This document shows, in pieces, positions 1-40,119 of a DNA stretch of 64,000 nt. The stretch is from NCBI GenBank assembly GCA_977017575.1, contig CDRNVI010000173.1:54732-118731 (forward strand), written 5' to 3'. Position 1 is the first letter of the stretch, and the number at the start of each line of letters is the position of its first letter. A program made the translations under genes and the position numbers. The stretch comes from Paramoeba atlantica (Eukaryota > Protista > Discosea). Under the pieces are notes generated by a model that saw only the letters and a program-made list of their open reading frames with translations, did no database searches and was not told the DNA's origin.

Positions 1-164
1 GTGAAGAAGGAAACAGAAGAGTGAGTGTGTTTGAGAAAGATGGAACATTTCTTTTTTCATTTGGTAAACATCACATGAAAGATCCTTATGGGATTGTTAT
101 TGATTCATTTGGAACAATTATTATTTCTGATTGGGAGAAGAAGTCGATTGAATTTTGGAAATAA
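1..164 (+). CDS. T1: 3' end of a TRIM-NHL family gene (last NHL blades), cut by the window edge
   Basis: The frame from base 3 reads EEGNRRVSVFEKDGTFLFSFGKHHMKDPYGIVIDSFGTIIISDWEKKSIEFWK*(TAA 162-164), matching the C-termini of T2-T8. Confidence 0.92.
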   Translation, partial: EEGNRRVSVFEKDGTFLFSFGKHHMKDPYGIVIDSFGTIIISDWEKKSIEFWK

Positions 165-800
165 CTAATTTTTGAAGAGAGGAGGAAGGTTTGTTTGTCA
201 TTTTCTTTTCTCTTGATTTCTATTCATTTAGCTGGGATTTTGTTTTTTTTTTCTCGATTTTCATTTGTTTTATTTTTTTAAATTAATTAACCATTTTTTT
301 GTTTTTTTGGTTCCTTTTTTCTGTATTTGGGAGGAAAATTAAAAAGAAAATTAACTTTTCCTCTCCCCCTTCCTCTCCTTCTCTTCCTTTTAGTCTCTGG
401 CGCGCTCTTACACATCTTCTTCAATTTCGATTCGATAATTTTCTTTGTGTGTTGTATTATGTTGTGGATGTTCTCTCTTTTTTCCTATTTTGTTTTCTCT
501 TCAAATTTTGGAGGTATTTTTTTCCTCTTTGCTTTGTTTTCTTGATTTGTTTTTATTTTTTTCTTTTTAATTTTTTTTTTGAGAATTTACTTCTGATGTT
601 GGGGTGAACAGAAAAATAGAGCTCCCAAAATGAATCTTCTCCTCTCTTTGTGTTTTGTTTTGTGTGTGTTGGATGGATCAACTTTATTGGCTCTTTTGTG
701 TTTCGTCTCTCTCTCTCCTTCCCCTCTCTTGTGTTGTGTTGTGTTGTGTTGTGTCTTTTTTTTTGTTTTTTCTTTCTGATTGAGGGGGAGGAATAAAACT
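165..800 (+). repeat. TRIM 3'-flank block duplicated at about 4911-5560, with related sequence downstream of other TRIM copies
   Basis: Shared ttttgaagagaggagga, ccttttagtctctgg, cacatcttcttcaatttcgattcgata..ttctttgtgtgttgtattatgttgtggatgttctctc and gtgaacagaaaaataga. Confidence 0.85.
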
Positions 801-1207
801 TCTTGGTTGATCAAATGAGGGTAATTAATACAATCTTTGGGAAAAAGGAAATTTTAATAATTAAAAAAATGAGAATATTACTCCCCCAAAGGAAGAACTT
901 CAACCCACCCCAAAATCGTTTCAAAGAAAGAGAAAATAGAAGAAACAACAACCTTGAAAATGAAAGAAGAAAGATGGGAAACACAAAAAAAGGTGTCAAT
1001 GGAGGAGAGAGAGAAGAGTCATCGATTGGTGTGGAGAAATCGAAAGCAGAAAAGAAGGAGAATCAAAAAAGCGAAGATTGGGAGCGAAAAGACCGTGCAG
1101 TCTCTGGAAGTTAAACACCCTAAAAAGAAGAAGAAGGGAGAGAATTATTAATCCGACAAAAAATGAGAAAAAAAAAAAAGAAAAAACAAACCTTCCTCCT
1201 CCTCTCT

Positions 1208-2763
1208 TCAAAATGATTTCCAAAATTCAATTGACTTATTCTCATAATCTGAAACAATAATTGTTCCAAATGAATCAATAACAACCCCATTAGGATCTCT
1301 CATATGATGTTGACCAAACGAAAAAAGAAATGTTCCATCTTTCTCAAACACACTCACTCTTCTATTTCCTGTATCACAAACAAAAATTCTACCTTCCCCA
1401 TCCACATCAACACTTCCCGGACAATCGAATTGAGAATCACCTGAACCTTCTGTTCCAAAACATCGAATAAAATTCCCTTCAATATCCATCACTTGAATCC
1501 GATGATTCCCCACATCAGAAATAACAATATTCCCATCTCTATCAACTACAACACCATAAGGTTGATCAAATTGACCTTCAGAAAAACCAAAAGAACCAAA
1601 AGAACGAAGAGAAGATCCATCATTATCAAACACTTGAATTCGATCATTTCCAGAGTCAGCAACAATAATTCGACCTTCTTCATCCACATCCACACCACAT
1701 GGTCGGTGAAACTGACCATCTTCAGAACCACTTGATACAAAAGATTTGATCAATTCTCCTTCTTCGTTTAAGATTACAACTCGATAACAATCTTGAGAAT
1801 GATCAAGAACAACAATTTGATCATTCAATCCAATTGAAACATCAACAGGTATCAACTGAAGTGAATCAATTGTTTTCTGAATTGTTGATTCAATCATCTC
1901 ATTTCCTTCTTTATCTCTCACTTTCAATCCACCCTCACCTTCACAAATAAAAATATTCCCATCACTGTTCACACTCACTCCATAAGGTTGATTCTTCAAA
2001 GGAAAAGAAGAAACAACACGAATCGAATCACCACCACCATCACAACAAATCACTCCTTTCTTTGGTTTTGAGAATAATCCAACAACAACTCCTTCAGAAA
2101 CAATATCAGTTGCAGTTTGAAGAAGAGTTGAAAAAAGTTGATCATCAAAAAAGAGAGAAACATCACAATCAGTTGTTGTTGTTGTTGGTGTGTTGGATAA
2201 ACGAATGATTGAATCTTTTCTGATTCTCAAATCTTCTTTCTCTAATTCTATTTCTTTCTTTTCAATTCTTTTCTTTTCTAATTTCTCTTCTAATTCTTTC
2301 ATTTCTTCTTCAATCTTTTTTCTTTTCTTTTCTATCAAAATCAATCTTTTCTCCAATTTATCTCCAATCTTTACAACTTCACTCCTTTTCTCCAAAATAC
2401 TTTCTTCAATTGATTTCACTTTCTCATTATGATCATCATGTGTTTCAAGAATACAACGAGTACAAACAAAAGAAGAACATTGAAAACAATATCCACAGAT
2501 TGTTTCAGATGGGTGTTTTGAACATTCTCTTTTCTTCAAATTCTCCAATCCCATCACTCCCACCACCCCCTCCTCCTCCAATCTTCTTCTTCTTCCACCT
2601 CTTCCCTCAACACCATCTCTTTCAGATCGTTTGTGATTTCGAGTGAAAATGTTTGAGGTGTGAGATGGATCACAAGAATCACAAATAAACATTTTACAAT
2701 CAGAACAAAACATTCGAGTTTGTTCTCCACACGTTTCGAAATTCGCACATTCTGATCCATCTC
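1208..2763 (-). CDS. T2: TRIM-NHL exon 2 only (B-box1, B-box2, coiled coil, 6 NHL); RING exon missing, so RING-less protein or pseudogene
   Basis: Open frame from the family acceptor (aacag|GAGATGGA at 2763) to the stop at 1208. Only about 13 nt of intron remain upstream before the sequence switches to the + strand T3 RING exon. First in-frame ATG is at 2713. Confidence 0.85.
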
Positions 2764-2832
2764 CTGTTGTTTTGTTACCTTCTATATTGTGGTGATGAAC
2801 AACAAAATGAAGGAGAAAGAGAAGAAGAGGTG

Positions 2833-4916
2833 ATGAAAAGAAGAAGAAAGGAAGAAGAAGAGAAAAAGAAAAGATTTGAATGTGGAATCTGTTTGGAGTT
2901 AATGAATTGGGAAAAAGAACCAAGGTTGTTACCTTGTTGTGGTCTTTCTTTTTGTACTCTTTGTCTTACCAAACTCTTTCTTCTTCAAAATCCTTCTCCT
3001 TCTTCTTCCTCTTCTTCTTCTTCTCTTTCTCCTTCTCCTTCTCCTTCTCCCTCTTCTTCTTCTTCCTCTTCTTCTTCTTCTCTTTCTCCTTCTCCCTCTC
3101 CCTCTCCTTGTTTCTCTTCTTCTTCCTCTTCTTCCTCCTCTCCTTCTTTGAAAGGAGTGAAATGTCCAGTTTGTAGAGAAATGAACGAATGTGAAAGCGT
3201 TGAAACACTTTCGATGAATTATTTGATTCCAGAAACGATTGATGTTCTTCTTTCTTCAAATTTGATCTCTTTCTCCAATCAACCAGGTTTTTTTCTCCAC
3301 TTTGGAACTCTCACTTTCTTTCCTCTTTCCTTTCTTTCTTCCTTGAAAAACATAATTTTGAAAAAGAAACAACAGGAGATGGTGGATCAAAATGTGTAAA
3401 TTTCGAAACGTGTGGAGAACGAACTCAAATGTATTGTTCTGCTTGCAACATGTTTATTTGTGATTCTTGTGATCCATCTCACACTTCAACTATTTTCACT
3501 CAAAATCACAAACGATCTGAAAGAGATGGTGTTGAGGGAGGTGGAAGAAGAAAAAGATTGGAAGAGGAGGGAGGGGTGGTGGGAGTGGGATTAGAGAATT
3601 TGAAGAAGAGAGAATGTTCAAAACACCCATCTGAAACAATTTGTGGATTTTGTTTTCAATGTTCTTCTTTTGTTTGTACTCGTTGTATTCTTGGTACACA
3701 TGATGATCACAATAAGAAAGTGAAATCAATTGAAGAAAGTATTTTAGAGAAAAGGAATGAAGTTGTAAAGATTGGAGATAAATTGGAGAAAAGATTGATT
3801 TTGATTGAAAAGAAAAGAAAAAGAATTGAAGAAGAAATGAAAGAATTAGAAGAGAAATTAGAAAAGAAAAGAATTGAAAAGAAAGAAATAGAATTAGAGA
3901 AAGAAGATTTGAGAATCAGAAAAGATTCAATCATTCGTTTATCCAACACACCAACAACAACAACAACAACTGATTGTGATGTTTCTCTCTTTTTTGATGA
4001 TCAACTTTTTTCAACTCTTCTTCAAACTGCAACTGATATTGTTTCTGAAGGAGGTGTTGTTGGATTACTCAAACCAAAGAAAGGAGTGATTTGTTGTGAT
4101 GGTGGTGGTGATTCAATTCGTTTTGTTTCTTCATTTCCTTTGACAAAAGGAACTTTGGGAGTGAGTGTGAACAGTGATGGGAATATTTTTATTTGTGAAG
4201 ATGACGGATTGAGGGTGAGAGATAAAGAAGGAAATGAGATTGGTTCAATTCAGAAAACAATTGATTCATTTGAGTTGGAACCTGTTGATGTTTCAATTGG
4301 ATTGAATGATCAAATTGTTGTTATTGATTGGTCTTCTTATCGAGTTGTAATCTTAAACAAAGAAGGAGAATTGATCAAATCTTTTGGATCAAAAGGTTCT
4401 GAAGATAGTCAGTTTGATGATCCAAATGGTGTGGATGTAGATGAAGCAGGTCGAATTATTGTTGCTGATACTGACAACCACCGAATTCAAGTGTTTGATA
4501 ATGATGGATCTTTTCTTCATTCTTTTGGTTCAAAAGGTTCTTCTGATGGTCAATTTAATCAACCAAATAGTGTTGTAGTTGATGGAGATGGGAATATTGT
4601 TGTTTGTGATTCTGGAAATGATCGGATTCAAGTGATGGATATTGAAGGGAATTTTATTCGATGTTTTGGAACAAAAGGTTCAGGTCCTTCTCAATTAAAC
4701 GAGCCACAAGGTGTTGATGTGGATGGGGAAGGTAGAATTTTTGTTTGTGATACAGGAAACAGAAGAGTGAGTGTGTTTGAGAAAGATGGAACATTTCTCT
4801 TTTCGTTTGGTAAACATCGCATGGAAGATCCTTTTGGGGTTGTTATTGATTCATTTGGAACAATTATTGTTTCTGATTGGGAGAAGAAGTCAATTGAATT
4901 GTGGAAATCGTTTTGA
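2833..4916 (+). CDS. T3: RING-B-box-B-box-coiled coil-NHL protein (TRIM-NHL-like E3 ligase) with truncated N-terminal head
   Basis: Exon 1 ends at 3286 (CCA G|gttttt) and exon 2 starts at 3376 (aacag|GAGATGGT); the phase-1 join is in frame. Motifs: RING CGIC..PCCGLSFCxxC..CPVC, B-box2 CSKHPSETICGFCFQC..C..C...H..H, six NHL repeats. The usual MSENRGKRKR head is absent, so the ATG at 2833 is the first available start. Confidence 0.88.
2991..3147 (+). repeat. TCT/TCC/CCT microsatellite encoding a poly-Ser/Pro loop inside the RING; length differs in every TRIM copy
   Basis: Directly visible between the CxxC..LQNP and KGVKCPVC segments. Confidence 0.9.
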
Positions 4917-6029: not shown

Positions 6030-8180
6030 TTAGTTGTTCCATAATTCAATGGACCAGGTATCAAAATCTAAAACAAGAATTGATCCAAATGAATCAATAA
6101 CAACCCTAGTAGGGTTCTCCATGTAACCTTTACCAAACGAAAAAAGAAATGTTCCATCTTTCTCAAACACACTCACCCTTTTGTTTACTTCTTCACAAAC
6201 AACAATTCTACCTTCTCCATCCACATCAACACTTAGTGGACCATTGATTCGAGAATCACGTGAACCTTTTCTTCCAAAACATCGAATAAAATTCCCTTCA
6301 ATATCCATCACTTGAATCCGGTCATTCCCAGAATCACAAACAACAATATTTCCATCTCTGTCAACTCCAACACCGTTTGGTTGATTGAATTGACCTTCAG
6401 AAGAACCTTTCGAACCAAAAGAACGAAGAAAAGATCCATCATTATCAAACACTTGAATTCGATCATTCAAAGTATCAGCGACAATAATTCGACCTTCTTC
6501 ATCCACATCCACACCACCTGGTTCATCAAACTGACCATCTTCATCACCATCTGATCCAAAAGATTTGATCAATTCTCCTTCTTCGTTTAAGATTACAACT
6601 CGAAAAGAATCTTGAGACCAATCAAGAACAACAATTTGATCATTCAATCCAATTGAAACATCAATAGGTTTCAACTGAAGTGAATCAATTGTTTTCTGAA
6701 TTGTTGATTCAATCATCTCATTTCCTTCTTTATCTCTCACTCTCAATCAATCACCTTCACAAACAAAAATATTCCCATCACTGTTCACACTCATTCCCCA
6801 AGGTCGATTCTTCAAAGGAAAAGAAGAAACAACACAAAAAGAATCACCACCACCATCACAACAAATCACTCCTTTCTTTCGAAACCCAACTCCTCCTTCG
6901 AAAACAATATCATTTGCAGTTTGAAGAAGAGTTGAAAAAAGTTGATCATCAAAAAAAAGAGAAACATCACAATCAGTTGTTGTTGTTGTTGTTGGTGTGT
7001 TGGATAAACGAATAATTGAATCTTTTCTGATTCTTAAATCTTCTTTCTCCAATTCTATTTCTTTCTTTTCAATTCTTTTCTTTTCTAATTTATCTTCTAA
7101 TTCTTTCATTTCTTCTTCAATCTTTTTTCTTTCTTCCTCAATCACAATCAATCTTTTTTCCAATTTATCTCCTATCTTCACAACTTCATTTCTCTTCTCT
7201 AAAATACTTTCTTCAATCGATTTCACTTTCTTTCTGTGATCATCATGCGTCCCAAGAATACAACAAACACAAACAAAAGAAGAACATTGAAAACAATATC
7301 CACTGATTGTTTCAGATGGGTGTTTTGAACATTCTCTCTTCTTCAATTTCTCTAATCCCACCACCCCCACCTCCAATCTTCTTCTTCCACCTCCCTCAAC
7401 ACCATCTCTTTCAGATCGTTTGTGATTTCGAGTGAAAATGTTTGAAGTGTGAGATGGATCACAAGAATCACAATAAACATATCACATTTGGAACAAAACA
7501 TTTGAGTTCGTTCTCCACACGTTCCAAAATTGGCACATTCCATTCCTCCATCTCCTATTTTGGTTTCTTTTTCATCAATTCAAGAGAGAAGGAAGGTTGA
7601 CAAGAAAAGAGAGAAAAATTAAGAAAAGTGAAAAAAAACTTGATTGATTGGAGAAAGAGAGCAAATTTGAAGAAAGAAGAACATCAATCGTTTCTGGAAT
7701 CAAATAATTCATCGAAAGTGTTTCAATCGTTTCACATTCGTTCATTTCTCTACACACTGGACATTTCACTCCTTTCTTCTTCTTTTCAGTTTGTAATGAA
7801 GATGAGCATGAAGAGGAAGAGGAAGAAGAAGAAGAAGGATTTTGATGATGAAAGAGATTGTTGAGACAAAGAGAGCAAAAAGAAAGACCACAACAAGGTA
7901 ACAACCTTGGTTCTTTTTCCCAACTCATTAACTCCAAACATATTCCACATTCAAATCTTTTCTTTTTCTCTTCTTCTTCTTTCTCTCTTCTTCTCTTTAT
8001 TCTCTCTCCTTCTTCTCTCTCTTTTCTTTGTTGTTCTTGATCTTCTATTTCTTGTTCTTCTCCAATATCACTTTCATCATCATCCTTAGTTTGTTCTTTT
8101 GTTTTTCGTTTATCCTTCTTCTTCTCACTTTTCACAATCTCTATTCCTCCTCTCTTTTTCTCTCCTTTTCCTTCACTCAT
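6030..8180 (-). pseudogene. T4: TRIM-NHL copy with two disabling lesions
   Basis: Exon 1 is 8180-7640 and exon 2 starts at 7554. A 1-nt deletion in B-box1 near 7472 (atgtttattgtgat vs atgtttatttgtgat in paralogues) shifts the frame. An in-frame TGA at 6747-6749 sits where paralogues have GGA. Confidence 0.8.
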
Positions 8181-9628: not shown

Positions 9629-11843
9629 TTAGTTATTCCAAAATTCAAGTGATTTTTTCACACCATCCGAAACAATAATTGATCCAAATGAATCAATAAC
9701 AACCCCATGAGGCCCTTCCATGTGACCTTTACCAAACGAAAAAAGAAATGTTCCATCTTTCTCAAACACACTCACTCTTCTATTTTCAAAATCAGAAACA
9801 ACAATTCTACCTTCCCTATCAACATCAACACCTCTTGGATAACTCAATTGAGAATCATCTGAACCATATGTTCCAAAACATCGAATAAAATTCCCTTCAA
9901 TATCCATCACTTGAATCCGGTGATTCCAACAATCAGAAATAACAATATTCCCATCTCTATCAACTCTAATATGGTTTGGGTAATAAAAGTGACCTTTCGA
10001 AGAACCTTTTGAACCAAAAGAACGAAGAAAAGATCCATCATTATCAAACACTTGAATTCGATGATTTGCAGTATCAGCAACAATAATTCGACCTTCTTCA
10101 TCCACATCCACACCACAGGGTTCCTCAAACTGACCATCTTCAGAACCTTTTGATCCAAAAGATTTGATCAATTCTCCTTCTTTGTTTAAGATTACAACTC
10201 GATAAGAACCTTGAGAATGATCAAGAACAACAATTTGATCAACCAATCCAATTGAAACATCAACAGGATCCAAATGAAGTGAATCAATTGTTTTCTGAAT
10301 TGTTGATTCAATCATCTCATTTCCTTCTTTATCTCTCACTCTCAATCCAACCTCACCTTCACAAGCAAAAATATTTCCATCACTGTTCACACTCATTCCA
10401 AAAGATTGACTTGCTAAAGGAAAAGAAGAAACAACACGAAATGAATCACCACCACAAATCACTCCTTTCTTTGGTTTGAGGAATCCAACAACACCTCCTT
10501 CAAAAACAATATCAGTTGCAGTTTGAAGAAGAGTTGAAAAAAGTTGATCATCAAAAAGAGAGATCCCAGTTGGTGTGTTGGATAAACGAATGATGGAATC
10601 TTTTCTTATTTTCAAATCTTCTTTCTCCAATTCTATTTCTTTCTTTTCAATTCTTTTCTTTTCTAATTTCTCTTCTAATTCTTTCATTTCTTCTTCAATC
10701 CTTTTTCTTTTTTCTTCAATCAAAATCAATCTTCTCTCCAATCTATCTCCAATCCTCACAACTTCATTTCTCTTCTCCAAAATACTTTCTTCAATTGATT
10801 TCACTTTCTCATTGTGATCATCATGTGTACCAAGAATACAACGAGTACAAACAAAAGAAGAACATTGAAAACAATATCCACTGATTGTTTCAGATGGGTG
10901 TTTTGAACATTCTCTCTTCTTCAAATTCTCCAATCCCATCACTCCCACCACCCCTCCCTCCTCTTCCAATCTTCTTCTTCTTCCACCTCCCTCAACACCA
11001 TCTCTTTCAGATCGTTTGTGATTTTGAGAGAAAAGAGTTGAAGTATGAGATGGATCACAAGAATCACAAATAAACATGTCACATTTGGAACAAAACATTC
11101 GAGTTAGTTCTCCACATGTTTCGAAATTCGCACATTCTGATCCATCATCTCCTATTTTGGTTTCTTTTTCATCAATTCAAGAGAGAAGGAAAGGTTGAAA
11201 AAGAAAAGAGAGAAAAAAATGAAGAAAAACGAAAAAAATTACTTGATTGATTGGAGAAAGAGATCAAATTTGAAGAAAGAAGAACATCAATCGTTTCTGG
11301 AATCAAATAATTCATCGAAAGTGTCTCAACGCTTTCACATTCGTTCATTTCTCGACACACTGGACATTTTACTCCTTTCAAAGAAGAAAAAGAAGAGGAA
11401 GAAGAGGGAGAGGAAGAAGAAGAAGAGGAAGGATTTTGAAGAAGAAAGATTTTGTTGAGACAAGGTGAACAAAAAGAAAGACTACAACAAGGTAACAACC
11501 TTGGTTCTTTTTCCCAATTCATTAATTCTAAACAGATCCCACATTCAAATCTTTTCGTTTTCTCTTCTTCTTCCTTTCTTCTTCTTTTCATCACCACCAC
11601 TCCTTCTCTTTCTCTTTCTCCTTCTTCACTTTGTTGTTCTCTCTTTCCAAGAACATCCTCATTTCTTCTTTCTCTTTGTTCTTTTTCATCATCATTATCT
11701 TCAATCACAACAACATCAGCATCGTCACAATCTGTTGTTTGATCTTCCTCCTCTTTCTTTCCTCTTTCGATTTTTCTCTTTTTCTCAGTTTCTAATTCTG
11801 TTTCTCCTCCTCCTCTCTTTCTCTTTCCTCTATTTTCACTCAT
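9629..11843 (-). CDS. T5: intact TRIM-NHL-like E3 ligase
   Basis: ATG 11843 (MSENRGKRKR). Exon 1 ends at 11243 (TCA A|gtaatt) and exon 2 starts at 11151 (aatag|GAGATGAT). The join is in frame to the stop at 9629, with all domains present. Confidence 0.92.
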
Positions 11844-17914: not shown

Positions 17915-18570
17915 TTTTTTTCTGGAGAAAAGAAATAAATAACAAGAAAAATAAAGGAAGAGAAGTGATGAAGAAAAAGACAAAAGAACAAACAAACACC
18001 CCAAAAGTTAACTCAAGAGTGAGAAGGGGGATCTGATGTCAAAAAAACAAAAACAAGAGAGAGGGAAGATATCTCTGTGAAAGAAAAAGAAGAGAAATGT
18101 GAGGGAGGAGAGACAATATAAAATATACAAAAAAGAAATGGAGGAAAATGGAAAAATGAAAAAGAAAAAACTCAATACCAAGAGAAAAACAATACACACA
18201 AAAAGGAACAATGGAGAATACCAATTCTCAGAGAGAGAGAGATTTCTGAGAATTTTTTTTTTCAAAATGGAGAAAAGGGAATTGAAAAAAGAAGAAATAA
18301 AAATACAAACATCTCTCAAAAAGGAAAGAGAAAAGAGGATCCCCAAAACGAAAAAAATGAGAAGGAGAGCCCCAAAAACCTTCAAAAAAAGAAGAAGGAC
18401 AATCTTCGAACCCAAAAACAGAGGTCCAACAGGAGAGAGAGGGGGAGAGAGAGAGAAGGGGGTGTCCAAATAACAATGAGAGAGAAGAACCACAGCAGAG
18501 AAACCAAGGAAGAGAGAAAGAGGAAGAAGAGAGAGGGAAGAGAAGAGGAAAAACAAAAAAAAAGAGAGAA

Positions 18571-26200: not shown

Positions 26201-26451
26201 AATTCACAAAGAATTGAAACACAATTTTTGGATAGGAATACATTCACATTGATGGTTCAATTAAACCTGCAAAACGAGAAGGGAATGAAAAGATTGAATC
26301 AAATGGAAAAGAAGAACAAAGAGAAGGAGAAGAAGAACAAAGAGAAGAAAGAGAAGAAGAAGGAAAAGAAAGAGAAAGTAAAAAGAGAAAGATTGGAGAT
26401 GAATGTGGTTTTGGTGATGAAATTGAATTCAAAAAACCTCGAATCGATTAA
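23202..26451 (+). CDS. ANK-B1: ankyrin-repeat paralogue, 17-exon type with one copy of the duplicable exon pair
   Basis: ATG 23202 (MTDRQLFEAVEGG), same exon series as A1, ending KKPRID*(TAA 26449-26451). The exon-6 donor GT is absent; a phase-0 GTTAGT nine codons downstream could substitute. Confidence 0.8.
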
Positions 26452-29700: not shown

Positions 29701-29808
29701 GAACAAGGAGAAGAAGGAGAAGAAAGAGAAAGTAAAAAGAGAAAGATTGGAGATGAATGTGGTTTTGGTGATGAAAAAATTGGATTCAAAAAACCTCGAA
29801 TCGATTGA
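26716..29808 (+). CDS. ANK-C: ankyrin-repeat paralogue with a deletion removing the first splice donor (possible pseudogene)
   Basis: ATG 26716 (MADFQLFEAVEGG), stop TGA 29808. At about 26811, caatcaagct joins directly to mid-intron tgtgtgttgagttgtgat. A cryptic phase-0 donor (TGT|gtgttg) is possible. Confidence 0.7.
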
Positions 29809-30101
29809 CCTCCACAAATTGAAAAGGGAAATCTTCTTTTTTCAAAAAAGAAATTGTTTATTTTATTTGGGGTGGTAGAGGAAATAATAAAAATAAAAAA
29901 TAAGGTGACAATTTCATAACAAAAGAAAGAGAGAAAATGAAAATCAAAAAGAGGAGGAAATGATGAAAATGGCTAAATGCAAATGGCTCAATTTAGCTTT
30001 CTAAAAAGAAAGGAGCAAGTTGCTTTTTCTCTTTTCGGTTTGGTGTGTCTTTGGTGAGAAGTTTGTTTTTTTGGGGTGAGAGAGAAAGAGAGAGAGAAGA
30101 A

Positions 30102-30885
30102 ATGTCATTAACAGACTGCCAATTATTTGAAGCTGTGGGAAGTGGGGATTGTGAAAAAGCCAAACAACTCCTTTTGAATCAAAAAGTGGATGTCAATCAA
30201 TCTCCAAGACACCAGGTTGTTCAGTCTCTCTCCTTTTTGTCTTTTTTTTTGTGTTGATCTTTTTTGTGATTGATCATCATCATCTTTGTGTGTATGATCA
30301 TCATGATTATCTGGTGTCTGTGGGTGTGTGTGTGTTGAGTTGTGATATTGATCTGAAAGTTTTGAGAAAAGAAAGGGTTTACTCCTTTGATGAGAGCTTG
30401 TGAAAAAGGAGACTTAAAGATGATTACTTTGTTGATTGAAAATGGTGCTTCCCTCAAGAGTCTTGCTCGGGTTATTTTCTCTTTCTTTTTTTGAAAAAGT
30501 TGGTTGTTTGTCTTGGGAGGAAAAAAGTTTGATGATTGATTGTCTCTGTTGTTATGGTTTTTAGGATGGATCAGATCCATTTATTCTCGCTTGTGAATTT
30601 GGGGATCTTGAAATAGTTCAATTTCTTTTTGAGAAAGGCTCTTCTCTTCATCCAATTTCAGTAACTCATCTCTCTTTTTTTTTTCTCTAATCATATTTTT
30701 TCATCTTGATTGTTGTTGGGTGTGTGTTCAACTCAATTCTTCTTTTTTTATTTTTATTTGATTGTAGCAAAAACCAAAGAAGACTGCATTATCTTCAGTT
30801 TGTGAAAAAGGACACTTTCAAATTGTTAAATTTTTGATTGAAAAAGGAGCCACAGTAGATCAAACAAAGACAGTTTCTCTTTCTC

Positions 30886-30916
<31 letters not shown>

Positions 30917-33900
30917 CTCCTCATATCAAATCAATTTTTAGATTCCTCTTTCCATTTTTTTTGGAAGTTATTATTTGTTTTTTGAATGATCATTTTGTTT
31001 GAACAGAGAGGGAAAAGCCCTTTGTGGATTTGTTGTGAAAGGGGAGACATTAAAATGGCAAATCTTTTGATTGACAACAAAGCAAAAGTGGATTCGTCAA
31101 CAAATGTAAAGTTTTTTTGAATGTTTTTTTGAATGTTTTCACAAAAAAAAACTAATCTTGACCAATCTTCTTATTTTTTTGGGGGGGCGGGGGAACAGAA
31201 AGGAGAAACTTCTTTTTGTTGTGCTTGTAAAAGAGGGGATTTTGAAATGGCACAATTTTTGATCAACAAAGGCGCAAATGTCAACTTTTCCTCACAAAAT
31301 GTTATTTTTTTCTTCCATACCCCTTTTTTCTCTTTCTCAACTTTCAAAGTTTTCAGAATTGATTTCTGAAACAAAAGAGATTTCCTTTAATTCACCTCTT
31401 TTTGGTAGAGTTGGAGTCCTTTATGTTTTGCAGTTTTGGGGAATGATATCAAAATGGTTCATTTCCTTCTTGAAAAGGGTGCTAATCCAAATATCCGTTC
31501 AAAAGTATGTTTTTATTTTTTGAATGTCTCTCTTTTTATTTATGTTGGAGGTGAAGAAGAGGAATTGCTGAATTTTATGTTGTCCTTTTGTCATTTTAGG
31601 ATAAAATGTCTCCCTTTCACGTTGCTTGTCAAAAAGGGAATTTAGAGATTGTCAAAACTTTTTTGAAAATAGAAGATCTTCAGATTGATCAACAAGGAAA
31701 TGGGGTTTCTTTTTTTCTTTTCTCTCTTGTTTGAGATTTCTTTGATGATTTATTGAAATCAACTTTTGTGAAACAAAAAGGGAAAGACAGCTTTGTTTGA
31801 GGCAACTCTGGGAGGTCATTTTGACATTATTACTTTATTGGTGGAAAGAGGTGCTTCAGTCAATTTTAAAGATCATGTCTGTTTTCTTTTTTTTAATTTG
31901 GAAAAAAGAAAAATATCTTTTTATTTTTTGAATGTCTTGTCTTTTTTTGTATGTTGGTGATGAAGAGGAATTTACGAAATTTTATTTTGTCCTTTTTTGT
32001 CATTTTAGTATGGAATGTCTCCATTTCGCGTTGCTTGTCAAAAAGGGAATTTAGAGATTGTCAAAAGGTTTTTGAAGATAGAAGATCTTCAGATTGATCA
32101 ACAAGGAAAAGAGGTTTTTTCTTTTTTTTCTTTTCTCTTGAGATTTCTTTGATGATTTATTAAAATCAACATTTGTGAAACAAAAAGGGAAAGACAGCTT
32201 TGTTTGAGGCAACTCTGGGAGGTCATTTTGACATTGTTACTTTATTGGTGGAAAGAGGTGCTTCAATCAATTTTAGAGATAATGTCTGTTTTCTTTTTTT
32301 TCTTTTTTTTTTTTTATTTTTTGAATGTCTTGTCTTTTTTTGTATGTTGGAGGTGAGGAAGAGGAATTTATGAATTCTATTTTGTCTTTTTGTCATTTTA
32401 GGGTGGAATGTCTCCATTTCGCGTTGCTTGTCAAAAAGGGAATTTAGAGATTGTCAAAATTTTTTTGGAGATAAAAGATCTTCAGATTGATCAACCAGGA
32501 AAGCAGGTTTTTTCTTTTTTTCTTTTCTCTTGTTTGAGATTTCTTTGATAATTTATTGAAATCAACTTTTGTGAAACAAAAAGGGAAAGACAGCTTTGTG
32601 TGAGGCAATTGAGGGAGGTCATTTTGACATTATCACTTTATTGGTGGAAAGAGGTGCTTCAATCAATTTTGAATATCATGTCTGTTTTCTCTTTTTGATG
32701 TTTTATTGTTTGAACATTTCTCTCTAAAAAAAATTGTGACAGCTTCGCAAAACCCCCTTTCACATTGCATGTGAATTAGGAGATCTTAAAATTGTTTCTT
32801 TCTTCACCAAACATGGTGCTCAACTTCAAGCTAGGTACAGTGATGGTCTTGTCTTGGCATGTAAAGAGGGTCACATGGATGTAATCTCTTATTTATTAGA
32901 GAATATGAAAGAGGTATTTTTTTTATTAGGAAACATTTTTTCTGTTTTCAACACAATATTCACAATTCACCACCCCACCCCTTTTTTTCATTTTTTTTAT
33001 CTCCACACACACCAGGAATTGAATGTTGGACCTTTATGTTTTGCAAGTGAAAAAGGGAAATTTGATTTGGCTCAATTTTTGATTTCTAAAAATTGTCCAA
33101 TCAATGGAATTCACAATCACTTTGTATTTTCTTTTCTTTTTCTTTCAAAAAGTGTTGAAATTTCTTTTCTCTTTGTCTTTACAAAGTCTCATCACCACAG
33201 AATGATTGTTCACCTCTGGCTCTTGCATGTATAAACAACAATTTGGATATTGTTGAATTATTATTACAAAATGGAGCACATCTCATTGTTCAAGTTTGTT
33301 GGTTTTTTTGATAATCTTCCTCAAAACAATCCTCTCTCTTCTTTCTTTCTTTCTTTTCTTTCTTTCAATTTACCATCAATTTGGTTTTGGGAAAACAGGG
33401 AAAGAGTATTCTTCATCAAGTTTGTGATTCTTATTCTGCTACTTTACCAGCTGTGAAGATTTTAGTTGAAAATGGAGCAGATGTAAATGAAACCTATCAA
33501 GTATTCTATTTTGATTTTTTTTCAATGGGTGTTTTTGAGTTTTTTTAATCATTTTTTTTGAAGGGTCGCACTCCTCTCATGGCTCTTATCCAATATCAAC
33601 GATTTCAGAAAATCAAAGAGGTTGTTTTATTTATGTTAAAAAATGGTGCTGAAATCAACAAAACATATGAGGTTTTTCTCATTTCTTTGATTTTTGGGGT
33701 ACTCTTGGGGAACAATTCATCAAACCAAAATGATAGGATGGGAGGACTGCGCTCCATGTGGCTGCAAGTAGGGGTATGTTGGAGATGGTGAAACTTTTGT
33801 GTGAATATGGTGCTGATCCTGAAATCAAAAATAACTTGGTTCTTTTTTCTTTGATTTTTATTGATTGACTTTTTTTTTTTAATATTTTAAAATATTTTAG

Positions 33901-34240
33901 GGACAAACACCAGCAGACACCACCTCTTCTCAACATGTGAAGAAGTTTTTGGAGGTTTTTCTTTTTCTTTTTCTCATTATTTTTGAAATTCCCAAAGAAT
34001 TGAAACACAATTTTTGGATAGGAATACATTCTCATTGATGGTTCAATTAAACCTGCAAAACGAGAAGGGAATGAAAAGATTGAATCAAATGGAAAAGAAG
34101 AACAAAGAGAAGGAGAAGAAGAACAAAGAGAAGAATAAAGAGAAGAAGGAGAAGAAAGAGAAAGTAAAAAGAGAAAGATTGGAGATGAATGTGGTTTTGG
34201 TGGTGATGAAATTGAATTCAAAAAACCTCGAATGGATTAA
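30102..34240 (+). CDS. ANK-A2: ankyrin-repeat paralogue of A1 with the triplicated exon pair
   Basis: ATG 30102 ([15 protein letters not shown]), exon series matching A1 including three MSPF/GKTAL exon pairs (31600-32679), ending KKPRMD*(TAA 34238-34240). Confidence 0.85.
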
Positions 34241-34522
34241 CCTCCACAAAATTGAAAAAGGAAATCTTCTTTTCAAAAAGAAGTTGTTTATTTTATTTGG
34301 GTGTGGGGGGGGGGAGAGGGGCAAATAATAAAATAGAAATAAAGAATAAGGTCCCAATTTCATACCAAAGAGAGAGAGAAAAGGACAAGAGAAAATGAAA
34401 ATCAAGAAATGAGCACCGCTAAATTTTGGTGCTCTAAAAAAGAAAAGTATTTTTCGGGTGCCAAAGAGGAGAAAGAGAAAGAGAAAAAGAGAGAAAGAAA
34501 GAGAAAGAGAGAGAGAGGGGAA

Positions 34523-37500
34523 ATGACAGACCGCAAATTGTTTGGAGCTGTGGAAGGGGGAGATTATGAAAAGGTTCAACAACTCCTTTTGAATCAAAAA
34601 GTAGATGTCAATCAAGCTCCAAGACGCCAGGTGATCATCTTCTTTTCTTTTTTTTATCATCATCCTCTCTGGTGATGATTCTGTGTCTCTCTGTGTGTGT
34701 TGTGATCTTGAGCTGAAAGTTTTGAGAAAAGAAAGGGATTACTCCTTTGATGAGAGCATGTGAAAAAGGAGACTTAAAGATGATCACTTTGTTGATTGAA
34801 AATGGTGCTTCACTTGAGAGTCATGTTGCTGAGGTTTTTTTCTCTTTCTTTTTTTCTTTTTTTGGTGATGAGCGAAAGTTTGATGATTGATTGTCTCTGT
34901 TGTTATGGTTTTTGAAGGATGGATCAGATCCATTTATTCTTGCTTGTGAATTTGGGAATCTTGAAATAGTTCAGTTTCTTTTTGAGAAAGGCTCTTCTCT
35001 TCTTCAATCATCAGTCAATCATCTCTCTTTTTTTTTTCTGATCCCATTTTTTCATTGCTTGTTGTGTGTATTCAACTCAATTCTTCTTCTTTTATTTTTA
35101 TTTGGTGTAGCAAAAACCAAAGAAGACTGCATTATCTTCAGTTTGTGAAAAAGGACACTTTCAAATTGCCAAATTTTTGATTGAAAAAGGAGCCAAAGTA
35201 GATCAAACAAAGACAGTTTCTCTTTCTTTCTTCCTCTCTCTCTCTCTCTTTCTCTCCTCATATCAAAGAGATTCAAAAATTTTTAAAATTATCGTTTTGT
35301 TTGAACAGGGAGGTGAAAGCCCTTTGTGGATTTGTTGTGAAAGGGGAGACATTGAAATGGCAAATCTTTTGATTGACAACAAAGCAAAGGTGGATTGGTC
35401 AACAAATGTAAACTTTCTCTTCAGGATTTTGAATGTTTTCACAAAAAAAAACTAATCTTTACCAATCTTCTTTTTTGGGGGGGAACAGGAAGGAGAAACT
35501 TCTTTTTGTTGTGCTTGTAAAAGAGGGGATTTTGAAATGGCACAATACAAAGGCGCAAATATCAACTTTTCTTTACCAAATTTTTTTCGTCCTCACACCC
35601 TCATTGTTAGTTTTTCTCTGTCTCTTTTTCAAAGTTTTCACAATTGATTTCTGAAACAAAAGAGATTTTCTTTAATTCATCTCTTTTTGATAGGGTTGGA
35701 GTCCTTTATGTGTTGCAGTTTTGGAGAATAATATCAAAATGGTTCATTTCCTTCTTGAAAAGGGTGCTCACCCAAATACCCTTTCAAAAGTCTGTTTTTT
35801 ATTTTTTGAATGTCTTGTCTTTATATCTATGTTGGGGAGGGGAGAAAGAGGAATTGATGGATTCTATTTTGTCCTTTTGTCATTTTAGGATGAAATGTCT
35901 CCATGGCATATTGCTTGTCAAAAAGGGAATTTAGAGATTGTCAAAATTTTTTTGAAAATAGAAGATCTTGAGATTGATCAACAAGGAAATCGGGTTTTCT
36001 TTTTTTCTTTTCTCTTGTTTGAGATTTCTTTGATGATTTATTGAAATCAACTTTTGTGAAACAAAAAGGGAAAGACAGCTTTCTTTGAGGCAACTGAGGG
36101 AGGTCATTTTGACATTGTTACTTTATTGGTGGAAAGGTGCTTCAATCAATTTTGAAAATCATGTCTGTTTTCTCTTTTTGATTTTTTATTGTTTGAACAT
36201 TTCTCTCTAAAAATTGTTACAGCTCCACAGAACGCCTTTTTCCATTGCATGTAAATTAGGAGATCTTAAAATTGTTTCTTTCTTCACCAAACATGGTGCT
36301 CAACTTCAAGTTAGGTACTGTGATGGTCTTGTCTGTGCATGTGAAGAGGGTAACATGGATGTAATCTCTTATTTATTAGAGAATATGAAAAAGGTATTTT
36401 TTTTTTCTGTTTTCAACACAATATTCACAATTCACCACACTCCCCCCTTTTTTTACCTTTTTTATCTCCACACACACCAGGAATTGAATGTTGGACCTTT
36501 ATGTTTTGCAAGTGAAAAAGGGAAATTTGATTTGGCTCAATTTTTGATTTCTAAAAATTGTCCAAGCAATGGAGTTCACAATCAATTTGTATTTCTTTTT
36601 TTCTTTTTCTTTTTTCAAAAACTTTGAAATTTCTTTAACTTTTCATCACCACAGGAGGGTTATTCACCTCTGACTCTTGCGTGTATAAACAACAATTTAG
36701 ATATTGCAGAATTATTATTACAAAATGGAGCACATCTCATTGTTCAAGTTTGTTGGTTTTTTGAATAACTTTCCTCAAAACAATCCTCTCTCTTCTTTCT
36801 TTCTTTTTTTTCTTTCTTTTAATTTACTATCAATTTGGTTTTGGAAAAACAGGGACGGAGTTCTGTTCTTTATCAAGTTTGCAATTCCTATTCTGTTAAT
36901 TTACCAGCTGTTAAGTTCTTAGTTGAAAATGGAGCAGATGTAAATGAAATCTATCAAGTATTTTCTAATTTGATTTTTTTCAATGGGTGTTTTTGAGTAT
37001 CATTTTAATCATTTTTTTTGAAAGGGTTCCACTCCTCTCATGGCTCTCCTTAGTCGACCTCCTGGTCGACAAAACGAGATTATTTTATTTATGTTAAAAA
37101 ATGGTGCTGAAATCAACAAAACAGATGAGGTTTTTCTCATTTCCTTGTTTTTGGGGTACTCTTTGGGAACAATTCATTCAACCAAAATGATAGGATGGGG
37201 ATACTGCGCTCCATCTGGCTGCACAAAAGGGACAGTTGGAGATAGTGAAACTTTTGTGTGAACATGGTGCTGATCCTGAAATCAAAAATAACTATGTTCA
37301 TTTTTCTTTGGTTTATTTATTTATTTTTTTGATGAATCTCTTATTTTTGATATTTTTAAATATTTTAGGGAGAAACACCAGCAGACTCCACCTACTATCA
37401 ATCAGTGAAGAAGTTCTTGAAGGTTTTTTAAATCTTTTCATCATTATTTTTGAAATTCACAAAGAATTGAAACACAATTTTTGGATAGGAATACATTCAC

Positions 37501-37730
37501 ATTGATGGTTCAATTAAACCTGCAAAACGAGAAGGGAATGAAAAGATTGAATCGGAAAAGAAGAACAAAGAGAAGAAGGAGAAGAACAAAGAGAAGAAGA
37601 AGAAGAACAAAGAGAAGGAGAAGAAGAAGGAGAAGAAGGAGAAGAAAGAGAAAGTAAAAAGAGAAAGATTGGAGATGAATGTGGTTTTGGTGATGAAAAA
37701 ATTGAATTCAAAAAACCTCGAATCGATTGA
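34523..37730 (+). pseudogene. ANK-B2: ankyrin-repeat paralogue of B1 with frameshifts
   Basis: ATG 34523. A 2-nt deletion near 36135 (gtggaaaggtgc vs gtggaaagaggtgc) gives TGA at 36153-36155. A 4-nt deletion near 37553 affects the last exon, and there is an in-frame 9-nt deletion near 35546. The ancestral stop position is 37730. Confidence 0.72.
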
Positions 37731-38027
37731 CCTCCACAAAATTGAAAAAGGAAATCTTCTTTTTTCAAAAAAGAAATTGTTTATTTTATTTGGGTGGTGG
37801 GGAGAGAGGGGAAATAATAAAATAGAAAAATAAAAAATAAGGTGACAATTTCATACCAAAGAGAGAGAGAAAATCAAAAGAAAAGGAAATGATGAAAATG
37901 GCTAAATTTAGTTTTCTAAAAAGAAGGAGCCAGTTTGTTTTTTTGGGGTGAGAGGAGAAAGAGAGAAAGAGAAAGAGAGATTTTTTTTGGAGTTCTCTCT
38001 TTGTTGGGATCGTTTCTTTTTTTGAAA

Positions 38028-40119
38028 ATGAGTGAAAAGAGAGAAAAGAGAAAGAGAGAAGTGGTGAGAAGTGAGAGTGAGGAGGGAAAAAGAGGAAAGA
38101 AAGAACAAATTCCTCATGATGTTGTTGTGATTGAAGATGATGTTGATGAAAGAGAACAAAGAAGCGAGGACGCCCTTGGAAAGAGAGAACAAGGAAGGGA
38201 AAGAGAAGGAGAAGAAGTGGTGATAAAAAGAAGAAGAAAGGAAGAAGAAGAGGTGATGAAAAGAAGAAGAAAGGAAGAAGAAGAGAAAAAGAAAAGATTT
38301 GCATGTGGAATATGTTTGGAGTTGATGAGTTGGGAAAAAGAACCAAGGTTGTTACCTTGTTGTGGTCTTTCTTTTTGCTCTCTTTGTCTTAACAAACTCT
38401 TCCTTCTTCAAAATCCTTCCTCTTCTTCTTCTTCTCCCTCTCCCTCTTCTTCTTCCTCTTCTTCTTCTTCTCCCTCTTCCTCTTCCTCTTCTTCTTCTCC
38501 CTCTCCCTCTTCTTCATCAGAACCAACTGAGGAGAAGAAAAAAGGAGTGAAATGTCCCGTTTGTCGAGAAATGAACGAATGTGAAACAATTGAAATACTT
38601 TCGATGAATTATTTGATTCCAGAAACAATTGATGTTCTTCTTTCTTCGAATCTAATCTCTTTCTCCCAGCAACCAACTTCAGGTTTTTACTTTTGTTTTT
38701 TTCTTTTCTTTTCTTTTCTTTCTCTTTGGAGGATAATTGACTGACTTCCTGTTTTAAACATAAAAAATAGAAGAGGAAGTTCAGGGAGTGATGGGATTGG
38801 AGAATTTGAAGAAGAGAGAATGTTCAAAACACCCATCTGAAACAATTTGTGGATTTTGTTTTCAATGTTCTTCTTTTGTTTGTACTCGTTGTATTCTTCA
38901 AACTCATGATGATCACAGAAAGAAAGTGAAATCAATTGAAGAAAGTATTTTGGAGAAAAGGAATGAAGTTGTAAAGATTGGAGATAGATTGGAGAGAAGG
39001 TTGATTTTGATTGAAGAAAAAAGAAAAAGAATTGAAAAAGAAATGAAAGAATTAGAAGAGAAATTAGAAAAGAAAAGAATTGAAAAGAAAGAAATAGAAT
39101 TAGAGAAAGAAGATTTGAGAATAAGAAAAGATTCAATTATTCGTTTATCCAACACACCAACAACAACAACAACAACAACTGATTGTGATGTTTCTCTCTT
39201 TTTTGATGATCAACTTTTTTCAACTCTTCTTCAAACCGCAAATGATATTGTTTTTGAAGGAGGTGTTGTTGGAAAAGGAGTGATTTGTTGTGATGGTGGT
39301 GGTGATTCACTTCGAGTTGTTTCTTCTTTTCCTTTAATTGAACCTTATGGAGTGAGTGTGAACAGTGATGGGAATATTTTTATTTGCGACTTTCTGGGTG
39401 GATTGAGAGTGAGAGATAACGAAGGAAATGAGATGATTGAATCAATAATTCAGAAAACAATTGATTCACTTGAATTGGAACCTGTTGATGTTTCAATTGG
39501 ATTGAATGATCAAATTGTTGTTCTTGATGGGTCTCAAGATTCTGATCGAGTTGTAATCTTAAACAAAGAAGGAGAATTGATCAAATTATTTGGATCTAGA
39601 GGTTCTCGAGATGGTCAGTTTGATGGTCCATGTGGTGTGGATGTGGATGAAGAAGGTCGAATTATTGTTGCTGATACTTTGAATCATCGAATTCAAGTGT
39701 TTGATAATGATGGATCTTTTCTTCGTTCTTTTGGTTCAAAAGGTTCTTCTGAAGGTCAATTTTGCTATCCTCGTGGTGTTGTAGTTGATAGAGATGGGAA
39801 TATTGTTATTTGTGATACTTGGAATCATCGGATTCAAGTGATGGATATTGAAGGGAATTTTATTCGATGTTTTGGAACAAAAGGTTCAGATGATTCTCAA
39901 TTCAATTGCCCAAGAGGTGTTGATGTGGATGGGGAAGGTAGAATTGTTATTGGTGATACAGAAAATAGAAGAGTGAGTGTGTTTGAGAAAGATGGAACAT
40001 TTCTTTTTTCGTTTGGTAAGGATCATATGGAAAATCCTTGTGGGGTTGTTGTTGATTCATTTGGAACAATTATTGTTTTAGATTGCGAGAAAAATTCAAT
40101 TGAATTGTGGAACGAATAG
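38028..40119 (+). CDS. T8: TRIM-NHL-like protein lacking B-box1 (RING-B-box2-coiled coil-NHL)
   Basis: ATG 38028. Exon 1 ends at 38682 (TCA G|gttttt). The acceptor aaaaatag|AAGAGGAAG at 38771 gives in-frame EEEVQGVMGLENLKKREC, and the gene ends at TAG 40119. Confidence 0.88.

What the first reader, a model, noticed from the sequence alone, without database searches (positions are those of the whole stretch)
1..40119. Interleaved TRIM-NHL E3 ligase and ankyrin-repeat supercluster: candidate protist cell-autonomous immune recognition locus
Seen: at least 8 RING-B-box-coiled coil-NHL genes and 5 large ankyrin genes fill 40 kb and end abruptly at single-copy housekeeping genes. Both families show birth-and-death (T4 and ANK-B2 disabled; T2, T3, T8 and ANK-C truncated), variation focused on binding surfaces, and exchanged upstream regions at both array ends. 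Known: in animals, expanded TRIM clusters with variable C-terminal binding domains (TRIM5 SPRY loops, fish finTRIMs) act as pathogen sensors; metazoan TRIM-NHLs (Brat, LIN-41/TRIM71, TRIM2/3/32) are low-copy. Inferred: this is a diversified sensor-plus-ligase repertoire, possibly against giant viruses or intracellular bacteria, with the ankyrin proteins as co-evolving sensors or adaptors.
Basis: partly seen in the sequence, partly recalled or inferred. Interest (0 to 1): 0.88.

Follow-up and report, generated by a model that had tools for sequence, protein, structure and literature searches.

The report
Hypervariable TRIM-NHL array with ankyrin insert
This is the end of a very large, fast-turning-over family of TRIM-NHL ubiquitin-ligase genes, probably in a marine amoeba, whose copies differ almost only on one face of their binding propeller; the block of five ankyrin genes in its midst looks like a recent local insert, not a partner system.

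Summary
The window has 8 RING/B-box/coiled-coil/NHL genes (one is only a tail at the window edge) and 5 ankyrin genes, followed by ordinary genes.

Three corrections:
- The ankyrin genes are not interleaved. They form one block (18.8-38.0 kb) inside a single TRIM head-to-head spacer, built by a 7.9 kb segmental duplication.
- The TRIM-NHL family is genome-wide: about 100 ORFs on some 56 contigs. The scan has already flagged it in at least 8 other stretches of this genome.
- Eight other TRIM loci (141 kb) hold no such ankyrin gene, and a second ankyrin array has no TRIM.

Variation in the NHL propeller falls on one face. Of 42 hypervariable sites, 32 lie in D-A or B-C loops and none in the opposite loops. 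Their nonsynonymous divergence is 3.6 times the synonymous divergence of flanking codons (CI 2.65-5.0).

This supports a diversified recognition repertoire. An immune role is inference only, and ankyrin co-evolution is not supported. Other agents' notes name the organism Paramoeba atlantica, which I did not verify. If correct, this is TRIM-NHL architecture outside animals.

The parts
3..161 (+).
   Evidence: tblastn to body residues 439-491, 70% identity
1211..2746 (-).
   Evidence: Its upstream ORF is the antisense of the next gene's RING exon, so this is an inversion junction.
2791..4916 (+).
   Evidence: RING alignment
6033..8180 (-).
   Evidence: Frameshift in B-box1 near 7472 and in-frame TGA at 6744-6746
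9629..11843 (-).
12909..15147 (+). A phase-1 intron of about 125 nt separates the RING exon from the B-box exon.
   Evidence: AlphaFold2 model m40b183b2ff3c has propeller pLDDT above 94 over most of the propeller.
15692..17914 (-).
17915..18806 (.). Divergent spacer between T7 and ANK1, carrying TRIM-type head-to-head spacer pieces
   Evidence: 17924-18168 matches 12891-12636 at 80% and 18526-18676 matches 12448-12302 at 80%
18807..22918 (+).
   Evidence: Pfam Ank on exon 21381-21551
23202..26451 (+). ANK2 (B1): 17 exons, about 617 aa; looks intact
26716..29808 (+). ANK3 (B2): a deletion removed the end of exon 1, its donor and most of intron 1; probably disabled
   Evidence: Alignment A1
30102..34138 (+). 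ANK4 (A2): premature stop in the last exon removes the conserved C-terminal motif
34523..37833 (+). ANK5 (C): 2-nt deletion in exon 9, 4-codon deletion in exon 6 and a 17-nt insertion that frameshifts the last exon
30082..37980 (+). Second copy of a 7.9 kb segmental duplication (first copy 18789-26710) that carries an ankyrin gene pair
   Evidence: One collinear blastn match, 91.6% over 8068 columns
38028..40119 (+). B-box1 is lost in frame and the upstream region is of ankyrin-spacer type.
41104..41649 (-). First ordinary gene after the array (M3 peptidase exon)
   Evidence: Pfam Peptidase_M3, 79 bits

Best explanation
The window holds the right-hand end of a long tandem array of TRIM-NHL genes. 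The array belongs to a family with about 100 ORFs in this genome.

Each gene has two exons. They encode a RING, two B-boxes, a helix of about 70 residues (coiled coil) and a six-bladed NHL propeller.

The family turns over by tandem and inverted duplication, truncation and decay. Gene conversion keeps the scaffold alike across copies. Selection keeps the copies different at about 40 positions on one face of the propeller: the D-A and B-C loops and the first residues of strand A. In animal NHL domains this is the ligand-binding top face.

The most likely working mode is as follows. Each paralog dimerises through its coiled coil and binds a different protein or RNA ligand on the propeller top. 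It then marks that ligand, or itself, with ubiquitin through the RING. The family would thus be a recognition repertoire aimed at fast-changing targets, such as viruses, bacteria, the kinetoplastid endosymbiont or mobile elements.

The five ankyrin genes are a separate young tandem family nested in one TRIM head-to-head spacer. They are not a functional partner.

Shown here: gene structures, lesions, fold, placement of variation, the excess of nonsynonymous change, and the lack of recurrent linkage to ankyrin genes.

Inferred: dimerisation, E3 activity, ligand type and immune role.

My odds: diversifying-selection repertoire about 0.75; non-self or selfish targets about 0.35; ankyrin genes unrelated about 0.8.
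For: - Architecture and fold. Closest solved NHL domains are Thin/TRIM32, TRIM71 and TRIM2/3. Closest solved RINGs are TRIM28 and TRIM32.
- Family size and spread: one search lists about 100 ORFs at 47-83% identity. All eight TRIM contigs that I looked up belong to one assembly.
- Decay: other loci carry many broken copies.
- Placement of variation (all-pairs pN/pS): D-A loops 1.32, B-C loops 1.24, A-B loops 0.29, C-D loops 0.76, coiled coil 0.32.
- Eleven disjoint closest-sequence pairs: top loops 1.21, bottom loops 0.42, N-terminal half 0.51. Top loops against all other sites: OR 2.2, p=2e-8.
- Hypervariable sites were defined on 35 other paralogs. Of the 42 in the NHL domain, 32 lie in top loops and none in bottom loops.
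- At those sites pN is 0.339, against pS 0.095 in non-hypervariable codons within 3 codons. The ratio is 3.6, bootstrap CI 2.65-5.04.
- pS falls from 0.117 next to hypervariable sites to 0.054 at 5-8 codons away. Conversion around selected diversity would give this pattern.
- Hypervariable sites hold up to 14 residue types. Tyr is enriched 45-fold and Trp 8-fold.
- Ankyrin independence.
Against: - There are no expression or infection data.
- Against synonymous change inside the same codons, hypervariable sites give only 1.26 (CI 0.90-1.77). The whole top-loop class gives 1.21 (CI 0.86-1.67). The case for dN above dS therefore rests on the flanking-codon control.
- The estimates are Nei-Gojobori counts. 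No likelihood codon model or recombination test was run.
- A local mutation hot spot would mimic the signal.
- This subfamily's RING has Leu where the fourth zinc ligand (His) normally sits, with an extra Cys beside it, and a 10-60 residue poly-Ser insert. Its Pfam RING scores are below cut-off. E3 activity is therefore not assured.
- Naming the variable face the binding face rests on strand topology plus knowledge of Brat and LIN-41, not on a superposition done here.
Confidence: 0.6

Rival explanations
1. One reading: a joint immune locus in which TRIM-NHL ligases and ankyrin proteins co-evolve as sensor plus adaptor.
For: The genes are physically adjacent. T7 and ANK1 share an 890 nt divergent spacer, and T8 has an ankyrin-type upstream region. 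Ankyrin variable sites are enriched at canonical binding positions (OR 2.8, p=3e-6). ANK1/ANK4 dN/dS is 1.28.
Against: No ankyrin exon of this family occurs in 141 kb of eight other TRIM loci. A second ankyrin array has no TRIM within 16.6 kb. Three of five ankyrin copies carry lesions. Ankyrin exons are not better conserved than introns. The B-type copies have dN/dS of about 0.5. The block is a single nested insert.
Confidence: 0.08
2. Neutral turnover: a young, conversion-homogenised family in which exposed loops simply tolerate change, with no selection for diversity.
For: Family-wide pN/pS is high, at 0.75. Pseudogenes are many. Own-codon and whole-class ratios are not significantly above 1.
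Against: Neutral sites cannot diverge 3.6 times faster than synonymous sites 1-3 codons away that share their genealogy. The equally exposed A-B and C-D loops are the most conserved parts, with pN/pS 0.29 and pN 0.013. The Tyr/Trp-rich composition points to selection for binding.
Confidence: 0.15
3. Endogenous RNA regulators: like Brat and LIN-41, the propellers bind RNA motifs, and the family diversified to control the amoeba's own mRNAs or transposon RNAs rather than pathogens.
For: TRIM71/LIN-41 and Brat NHL domains, including RNA-bound structures, are among the closest solved structures. Lys and Arg are enriched at the hypervariable sites, 3.9- and 1.7-fold.
Against: The best match is Thin/TRIM32, a protein-binding NHL. 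Glu and Asp are also common at the variable sites. Housekeeping regulators do not normally show birth-and-death turnover with about 100 copies.
Confidence: 0.15
4. Assembly artefact: the copies are collapsed or expanded haplotypes or a mis-join.
For: The public assembly of this organism is fragmented and breaks inside T6. Protein P0061 is a 291-aa piece on a 7.2 kb contig.
Against: Neighbouring copies differ by 8-17% in DNA and alternate in strand. They also differ in structure through lost RING, lost B-box1 and frameshifts. Exact proteins of this window recur on contigs of another assembly (rows with '-' as source).
Confidence: 0.02

Closest known systems
Animal TRIM-NHL proteins (TRIM32/Thin, TRIM71/LIN-41, TRIM2, TRIM3, Brat, Mei-P26)
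   Same: The domain order is the same: RING, B-box, coiled coil, six-bladed NHL. These are the closest solved NHL structures: Thin E=3e-99 by sequence and TM 0.83 by fold, then TRIM71, then TRIM2/3. The RING is closest to TRIM28 and TRIM32.
   Different: There is no filamin domain, unlike TRIM2/3/71. There are two B-boxes, unlike TRIM32. The RING lacks the canonical His and carries a poly-Ser insert. There are about 100 fast-evolving copies instead of a few conserved ones. The organism is probably not an animal, whereas Marin 2012 (PMC3503706) lists this subfamily's range as animals and Sardiello 2008 (PMC2533329) calls the TRIM structure a metazoan innovation. Orthology was not tested. NHL identity to archaeal and bacterial NHL proteins (36-38%) equals that to animal TRIM71-like proteins (38-39%).
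Vertebrate group 2 TRIMs (TRIM5alpha, TRIM22, fish finTRIMs)
   Same: Clustered, lineage-specific TRIM expansions with a conserved RBCC chassis. Change is concentrated in the loops of the C-terminal binding domain (PMC2533329; TRIM5 and finTRIM details from my own knowledge).
   Different: The variable module there is B30.2/SPRY and here it is NHL. Antiviral function is shown there and is untested here.
F-box and MATH-BTB ubiquitin-ligase adapter expansions in nematodes and plants (Thomas 2006, Genome Research; from my own knowledge, title seen cited)
   Same: Hundreds of E3 substrate-recognition genes evolving by birth-and-death. Positive selection falls on the substrate-binding domain and purifying selection on the ligase-docking part. 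They are proposed to target foreign proteins.
   Different: Those are adapters for cullin ligases. Here recognition and RING sit in one polypeptide.
Large B-box/NHL clusters of molluscs, echinoderms and brachiopods in the ESM Atlas
   Same: These are the nearest clusters by protein-language features (0.92-0.93). They carry B-box plus NHL and are large, up to 251 members.
   Different: They are animal proteins, and I found no analysis of them in my literature searches. I did not test their relationship to this family.

Membership tests
TRIM / RBCC family | N-terminal RING finger with eight zinc ligands | tested here: inconclusive
   Pfam RING models score 21-25 bits, below their cut-offs of 25-27. 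The pattern is C-x2-C...CC-G-L-x2-C-x2-C...C-P-V-C, with Leu in place of the usual His and an extra Cys beside it. A divergent paralog, P0074, keeps C-G-H. The best PDB matches are the TRIM28 RING (2e-7) and TRIM32 RING (8e-4).
TRIM / RBCC family | One or two B-boxes directly after the RING | tested here: met
   zf-B_box scores 25-41 bits against a cut-off of 24.1, with a second stretch or ANCHR-like_BBOX match for B-box1. The Cys/His columns are invariant across 68 sequences.
TRIM / RBCC family | Coiled coil after the B-boxes | tested here: met
   AlphaFold2 predicts one helix over residues 107-178, pLDDT 81-91. Dimer formation was not tested.
TRIM-NHL (Marin subfamily C / class VII) | C-terminal six-bladed NHL propeller | tested here: met
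   Pfam NHL scores 93-108 bits. The model has six four-stranded blades with pLDDT above 94 over most of the propeller. Foldseek TM is 0.81-0.85 to Thin, TRIM71 and TRIM2/3.
TRIM-NHL (Marin subfamily C / class VII) | Common descent with animal TRIM-NHL genes (orthology or nesting in that clade) | not tested
   The representative search was swamped by giant multi-NHL proteins. NHL identity to prokaryotic and to animal proteins is about equal. No tree was built.
TRIM-NHL (Marin subfamily C / class VII) | Filamin/IG domain between coiled coil and NHL (TRIM2/3/71/45 type) | tested here: not met
   There is no PF00630 hit. Residues 179-225 are a short low-confidence linker with one helix. TRIM32/Thin also lack this domain.
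TRIM / RBCC family | E3 ubiquitin-ligase activity | not testable with these tools
   This needs an in vitro auto-ubiquitination assay.
Diversified immune or recognition repertoire | Excess nonsynonymous change focused on the ligand-binding surface | tested here: met
   The ratio is 3.6 (CI 2.65-5.04) against flanking synonymous sites. Of 42 hypervariable sites, 32 lie in top loops and 0 in bottom loops. The own-codon ratio of 1.26 is not significant.
Diversified immune or recognition repertoire | Induction by, or binding to, pathogens | not testable with these tools
No challenge data are available.
Ankyrin-repeat proteins | Tandem 33-residue ankyrin repeats | tested here: met
   Pfam Ank/Ank_2/Ank_3 hits are above cut-off on exon 21381-21551. 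85 repeat exons align to the consensus.

The most novel reading that the evidence does not exclude
A non-animal, the marine amoebozoan Paramoeba that houses a kinetoplastid endosymbiont, carries the complete animal-type RING/B-box/coiled-coil/NHL architecture. It inherited this from a pre-animal ancestor, assembled it independently, or acquired it from an animal. It has expanded it to about 100 genes whose propeller top faces are kept diverse by selection. This would be a cell-autonomous recognition system of protists built on an E3 ligase, against viruses, bacteria or its own symbiont.
Probability: 0.3. Interest if true: 0.85.

Novelty: new variant of a known kind. Interest (0 to 1): 0.64.

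Why it matters
TRIM-NHL proteins are textbook low-copy, conserved animal regulators, and the TRIM architecture has been called a metazoan innovation (PMC2533329, PMC3503706). Here the same architecture behaves like TRIM5 or finTRIM genes, but with the NHL propeller as the variable module. The organism is probably an amoeba.

If the organism assignment and the selection signal hold, three things follow:
- The known range of TRIM-NHL extends beyond animals.
- The NHL top face is shown to be usable as a diversifiable binding surface.
- There is a concrete gene family for testing how free-living or symbiont-bearing protists recognise intruders, where almost nothing is known.

It also sets a limit. 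Physical clustering with ankyrin genes should not be read as a functional pairing.

Tried and rejected
- **Read mapping.** After that I kept those 37 bases out of targeted queries. By oversight, (Rfam; tRNA scan) took the whole window as source and so included them. Local BLAST in scripts also read the whole window file. Nothing was reported at those positions.
- **Ancestral states.** I ran no SLAC-type counts and used pairwise counts on disjoint pairs instead.
- **Representative search.** The top 150 hits were nearly all giant multi-NHL proteins. It was useless for tracing RBCC-NHL relatives.
- **Ankyrin tail exon search.** It returned one hit, so the ankyrin family cannot be counted this way. 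That hit did lead to the second array, L009.
- **Literature.** Searches for TRIM-NHL outside animals or in Paramoeba found nothing.
- **Organism identification.** I tried neighbouring genes (Ras-like, 14-3-3-like, kinase) and cluster names. None was usable, because the length window of the homology search excludes full-length relatives of single exons.
- **Considered and rejected.** A kinetoplastid origin of the window is ruled out by many GT-AG introns and genes on both strands. A haplotype artefact is unlikely (see rivals).

Full report
**What is there.** The window is AT-rich (about 33% G+C) and gene-dense, with short GT-AG introns.
- A tblastn scan with one complete copy finds eight TRIM-NHL genes. 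One is only a C-terminal tail at 3-161. Six lie between 1.2 and 17.9 kb on alternating strands. One lies at 38.0-40.1 kb.
- Pfam gives NHL at 93-108 bits and zf-B_box at 25-41 bits, both above cut-off. RING models score just below cut-off.
- Each gene has a RING exon and a B-box/coiled-coil/NHL exon, joined by a phase-1 intron of about 125 nt in the reference gene.
- Between 18.8 and 37.8 kb lie five ankyrin genes, all on the + strand. They have one repeat per phase-0 exon of 87-126 nt and one two-repeat exon of 171 nt. A 36-nt exon and a last exon encoding an acidic tail follow (Pfam Ank).
- From 41 kb on come M3 peptidase, PROPPIN, PI3/4-kinase, a protein kinase and LRR exons.

**Lesions.**
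- The copy at 6033-8180 has a frameshift in B-box1 and an in-frame TGA.
- The copy at 1211-2746 has no RING exon and abuts the antisense of its neighbour's RING exon. That neighbour has lost its N-terminal leader.
- The last copy lacks B-box1 but still splices in frame.
- ANK3 lost its first splice donor.
- ANK4 has a premature stop in the last exon.
- ANK5 has three lesions.
- Other loci of the family show the same mix of intact and decayed copies.

**Layout.** The ankyrin genes are not interleaved with the TRIM genes.
- They form one block. A single collinear match (18789-26710 against 30082-37980, 91.6% over 8 kb) shows that a gene pair was duplicated as a unit, with ANK3 between the two copies.
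- The block sits inside what was a TRIM head-to-head spacer. The half next to the gene at 15692-17914 still matches the spacer between the genes at 9629-11843 and 12909-15147.
- The ankyrin-type intergenic spacer runs to 48 nt before the ATG of the last TRIM gene. They are the two junctions of the nested block.

**The family is genome-wide.**
- A protein search returns about 100 ORFs at 47-83% identity on some 56 contigs of different lengths. All eight TRIM contigs that I fetched belong to one public assembly.
- A subfamily at about 55% identity has at least nine further members.
- Earlier notes of this scan describe the same family in at least eight other stretches. One of them abuts this window and reports 21 copies. 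I did not test that count.

**No recurrent link to ankyrin genes.**
- Eight other TRIM loci, 141 kb in all, hold no exon of this ankyrin family.
- A second ankyrin array on another contig (L009, at least three genes, 82-87% DNA identity) has no TRIM in its 16.6 kb.
- Ankyrin exons are no better conserved than their introns: 95.3 against 96.3%, 94.1 against 93.1%, and 95.1 against 96.0%.
- dN/dS is 1.28 for ANK1/ANK4 and about 0.5 for the other pairs.
- Variable positions are enriched at the canonical binding positions of the repeat: 23% against 10%, OR 2.8. Against other surface positions it is only 23% against 14%, p=0.01. Relaxed constraint on young duplicates, three of them damaged, explains this as well as selection does.

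**Where the TRIM copies differ.**
- An AlphaFold2 model built on 68 family members gives a confident six-bladed propeller and a 72-residue helix.
- I classed sites by the model's strands and loops, not by their variability.
- All-pairs pN/pS is 1.32 in D-A loops and 1.24 in B-C loops. It is 0.29 in A-B loops, 0.76 in C-D loops (where pN is only 0.013), 0.85 in strands and 0.32 in the coiled coil.
- With eleven disjoint closest-sequence pairs, the top-loop class gives 1.21 (CI 0.86-1.67), bottom loops 0.42 and the N-terminal half 0.51. Nonsynonymous changes are enriched in top loops (OR 2.2, p=2e-8).
- To avoid picking sites on the data being tested, I defined hypervariable sites on 35 paralogs absent from the codon set. 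Of the 42 in the propeller, 32 lie in D-A or B-C loops. The rest lie mostly in strand residues next to those loops. None lies in A-B or C-D loops.
- In the codon set these sites have pN 0.339. Synonymous divergence in the same codons is 0.269, giving a ratio of 1.26, which is not significant. That figure is inflated by multi-hit codons: 124 of 284 differing codon pairs differ at two or three bases.
- Synonymous divergence in non-hypervariable codons within three codons is 0.095. The ratio is then 3.6, bootstrap CI 2.65-5.04.
- Synonymous divergence falls from 0.117 beside hypervariable sites to 0.054 at five to eight codons away. This is what gene conversion of the scaffold around sites held diverse by selection would produce.
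- Hypervariable sites hold up to 14 residue types among 51 copies and are enriched in Tyr (45-fold), Trp, Cys, His and Lys.

**How I read it.**
- D-A and B-C loops lie on the same face of a propeller by topology. From my knowledge of Brat and LIN-41, that is the top face, where RNA binds. I did not superpose the structures here.
- The pattern fits a repertoire of ligases with one chassis and many binding specificities, kept diverse by selection.
- Whether the ligands are proteins or RNAs, and whether they come from pathogens, the endosymbiont, mobile elements or the cell itself, is open.
- E3 activity is inferred only. This subfamily's RING has Leu at the usual His position, an extra neighbouring Cys, and a poly-Ser insert of 10-60 residues.

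**Organism.**
- The window cannot be kinetoplastid, because it has many cis-introns and genes on both strands.
- Follow-up notes of this scan say the assembly also holds a Perkinsela-like kinetoplastid, and they name the host Paramoeba atlantica. I did not verify this.
- Abundant 50-150 nt introns match the host genome of P. pemaquidensis. Its G+C is 43%, against 33% here (PMC5601477).

**Comparison with the known.**
- The closest solved NHL domains are Thin/TRIM32, TRIM71, TRIM2/3 and Brat.
- The closest solved RING and B-box regions belong to TRIM28, TRIM32, TRIM72 and TRIM3.
- The literature gives TRIM-NHL an animal range (PMC3503706) and calls the TRIM structure a metazoan innovation (PMC2533329).
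- My searches found no report of TRIM-NHL in protists.
- Descent from the animal clade is untested. NHL identity to prokaryotic NHL proteins is as high as to animal TRIM71-like proteins.
- In behaviour the family resembles TRIM5/finTRIM clusters and the F-box and MATH-BTB adapter expansions of nematodes and plants.

**Verdict.** I class it as a new variant of a known kind. Interest is moderate to high, and most of it hangs on the organism not being an animal.

Noticed in passing
L009:1-7797 (-): Two abutting intronless ORFs (1050 aa, plus at least 1549 aa running off the contig) lie next to the second ankyrin array. Neither has a Pfam hit above cut-off. Together they may be a giant orphan protein.
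   Followed up: partly
window 12909-13505 and the other RING exons: This subfamily's RING reads CC-G-L where a divergent paralog has C-G-H. It also carries a poly-Ser/Pro insert of very variable length (about 10 to 60 residues) between the sixth and seventh zinc ligands.
   Followed up: partly
window 2767-2923, 11465-12040, 17566-18036, 37786-38346: The antisense strand of every RING exon stays open and gives a recurrent ORF beginning MVLFPNS.... In the RING-less gene at 1211-2746 this antisense ORF is fused in frame to the B-box exon.
   Followed up: no
window 61878-62494 (+): Exons of another ankyrin gene, only 42-58% identical to the array's repeats, lie well outside the block.
   Followed up: no
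window 57800-60300 (+): A protein-kinase exon pair is followed on the same strand by LRR exons. I confirmed only the Pfam kinase and LRR hits.
   Followed up: partly
L002:3240-4817 (-): A 525-aa ORF with a CotH kinase domain (171 bits) and a weak teneurin-type EGF match lies 5 kb from a TRIM-NHL gene.
   Followed up: no
L004:14838-20485 (-): There are four tRNA genes in two identical-scoring pairs, which suggests a local duplication.
   Followed up: no
L004:10001-12073: A 53%-identical family member is called as one 690-aa ORF. This is only because its intron happens to be open in frame, with the Phe/Leu-rich read-through typical of introns here.
   Followed up: partly
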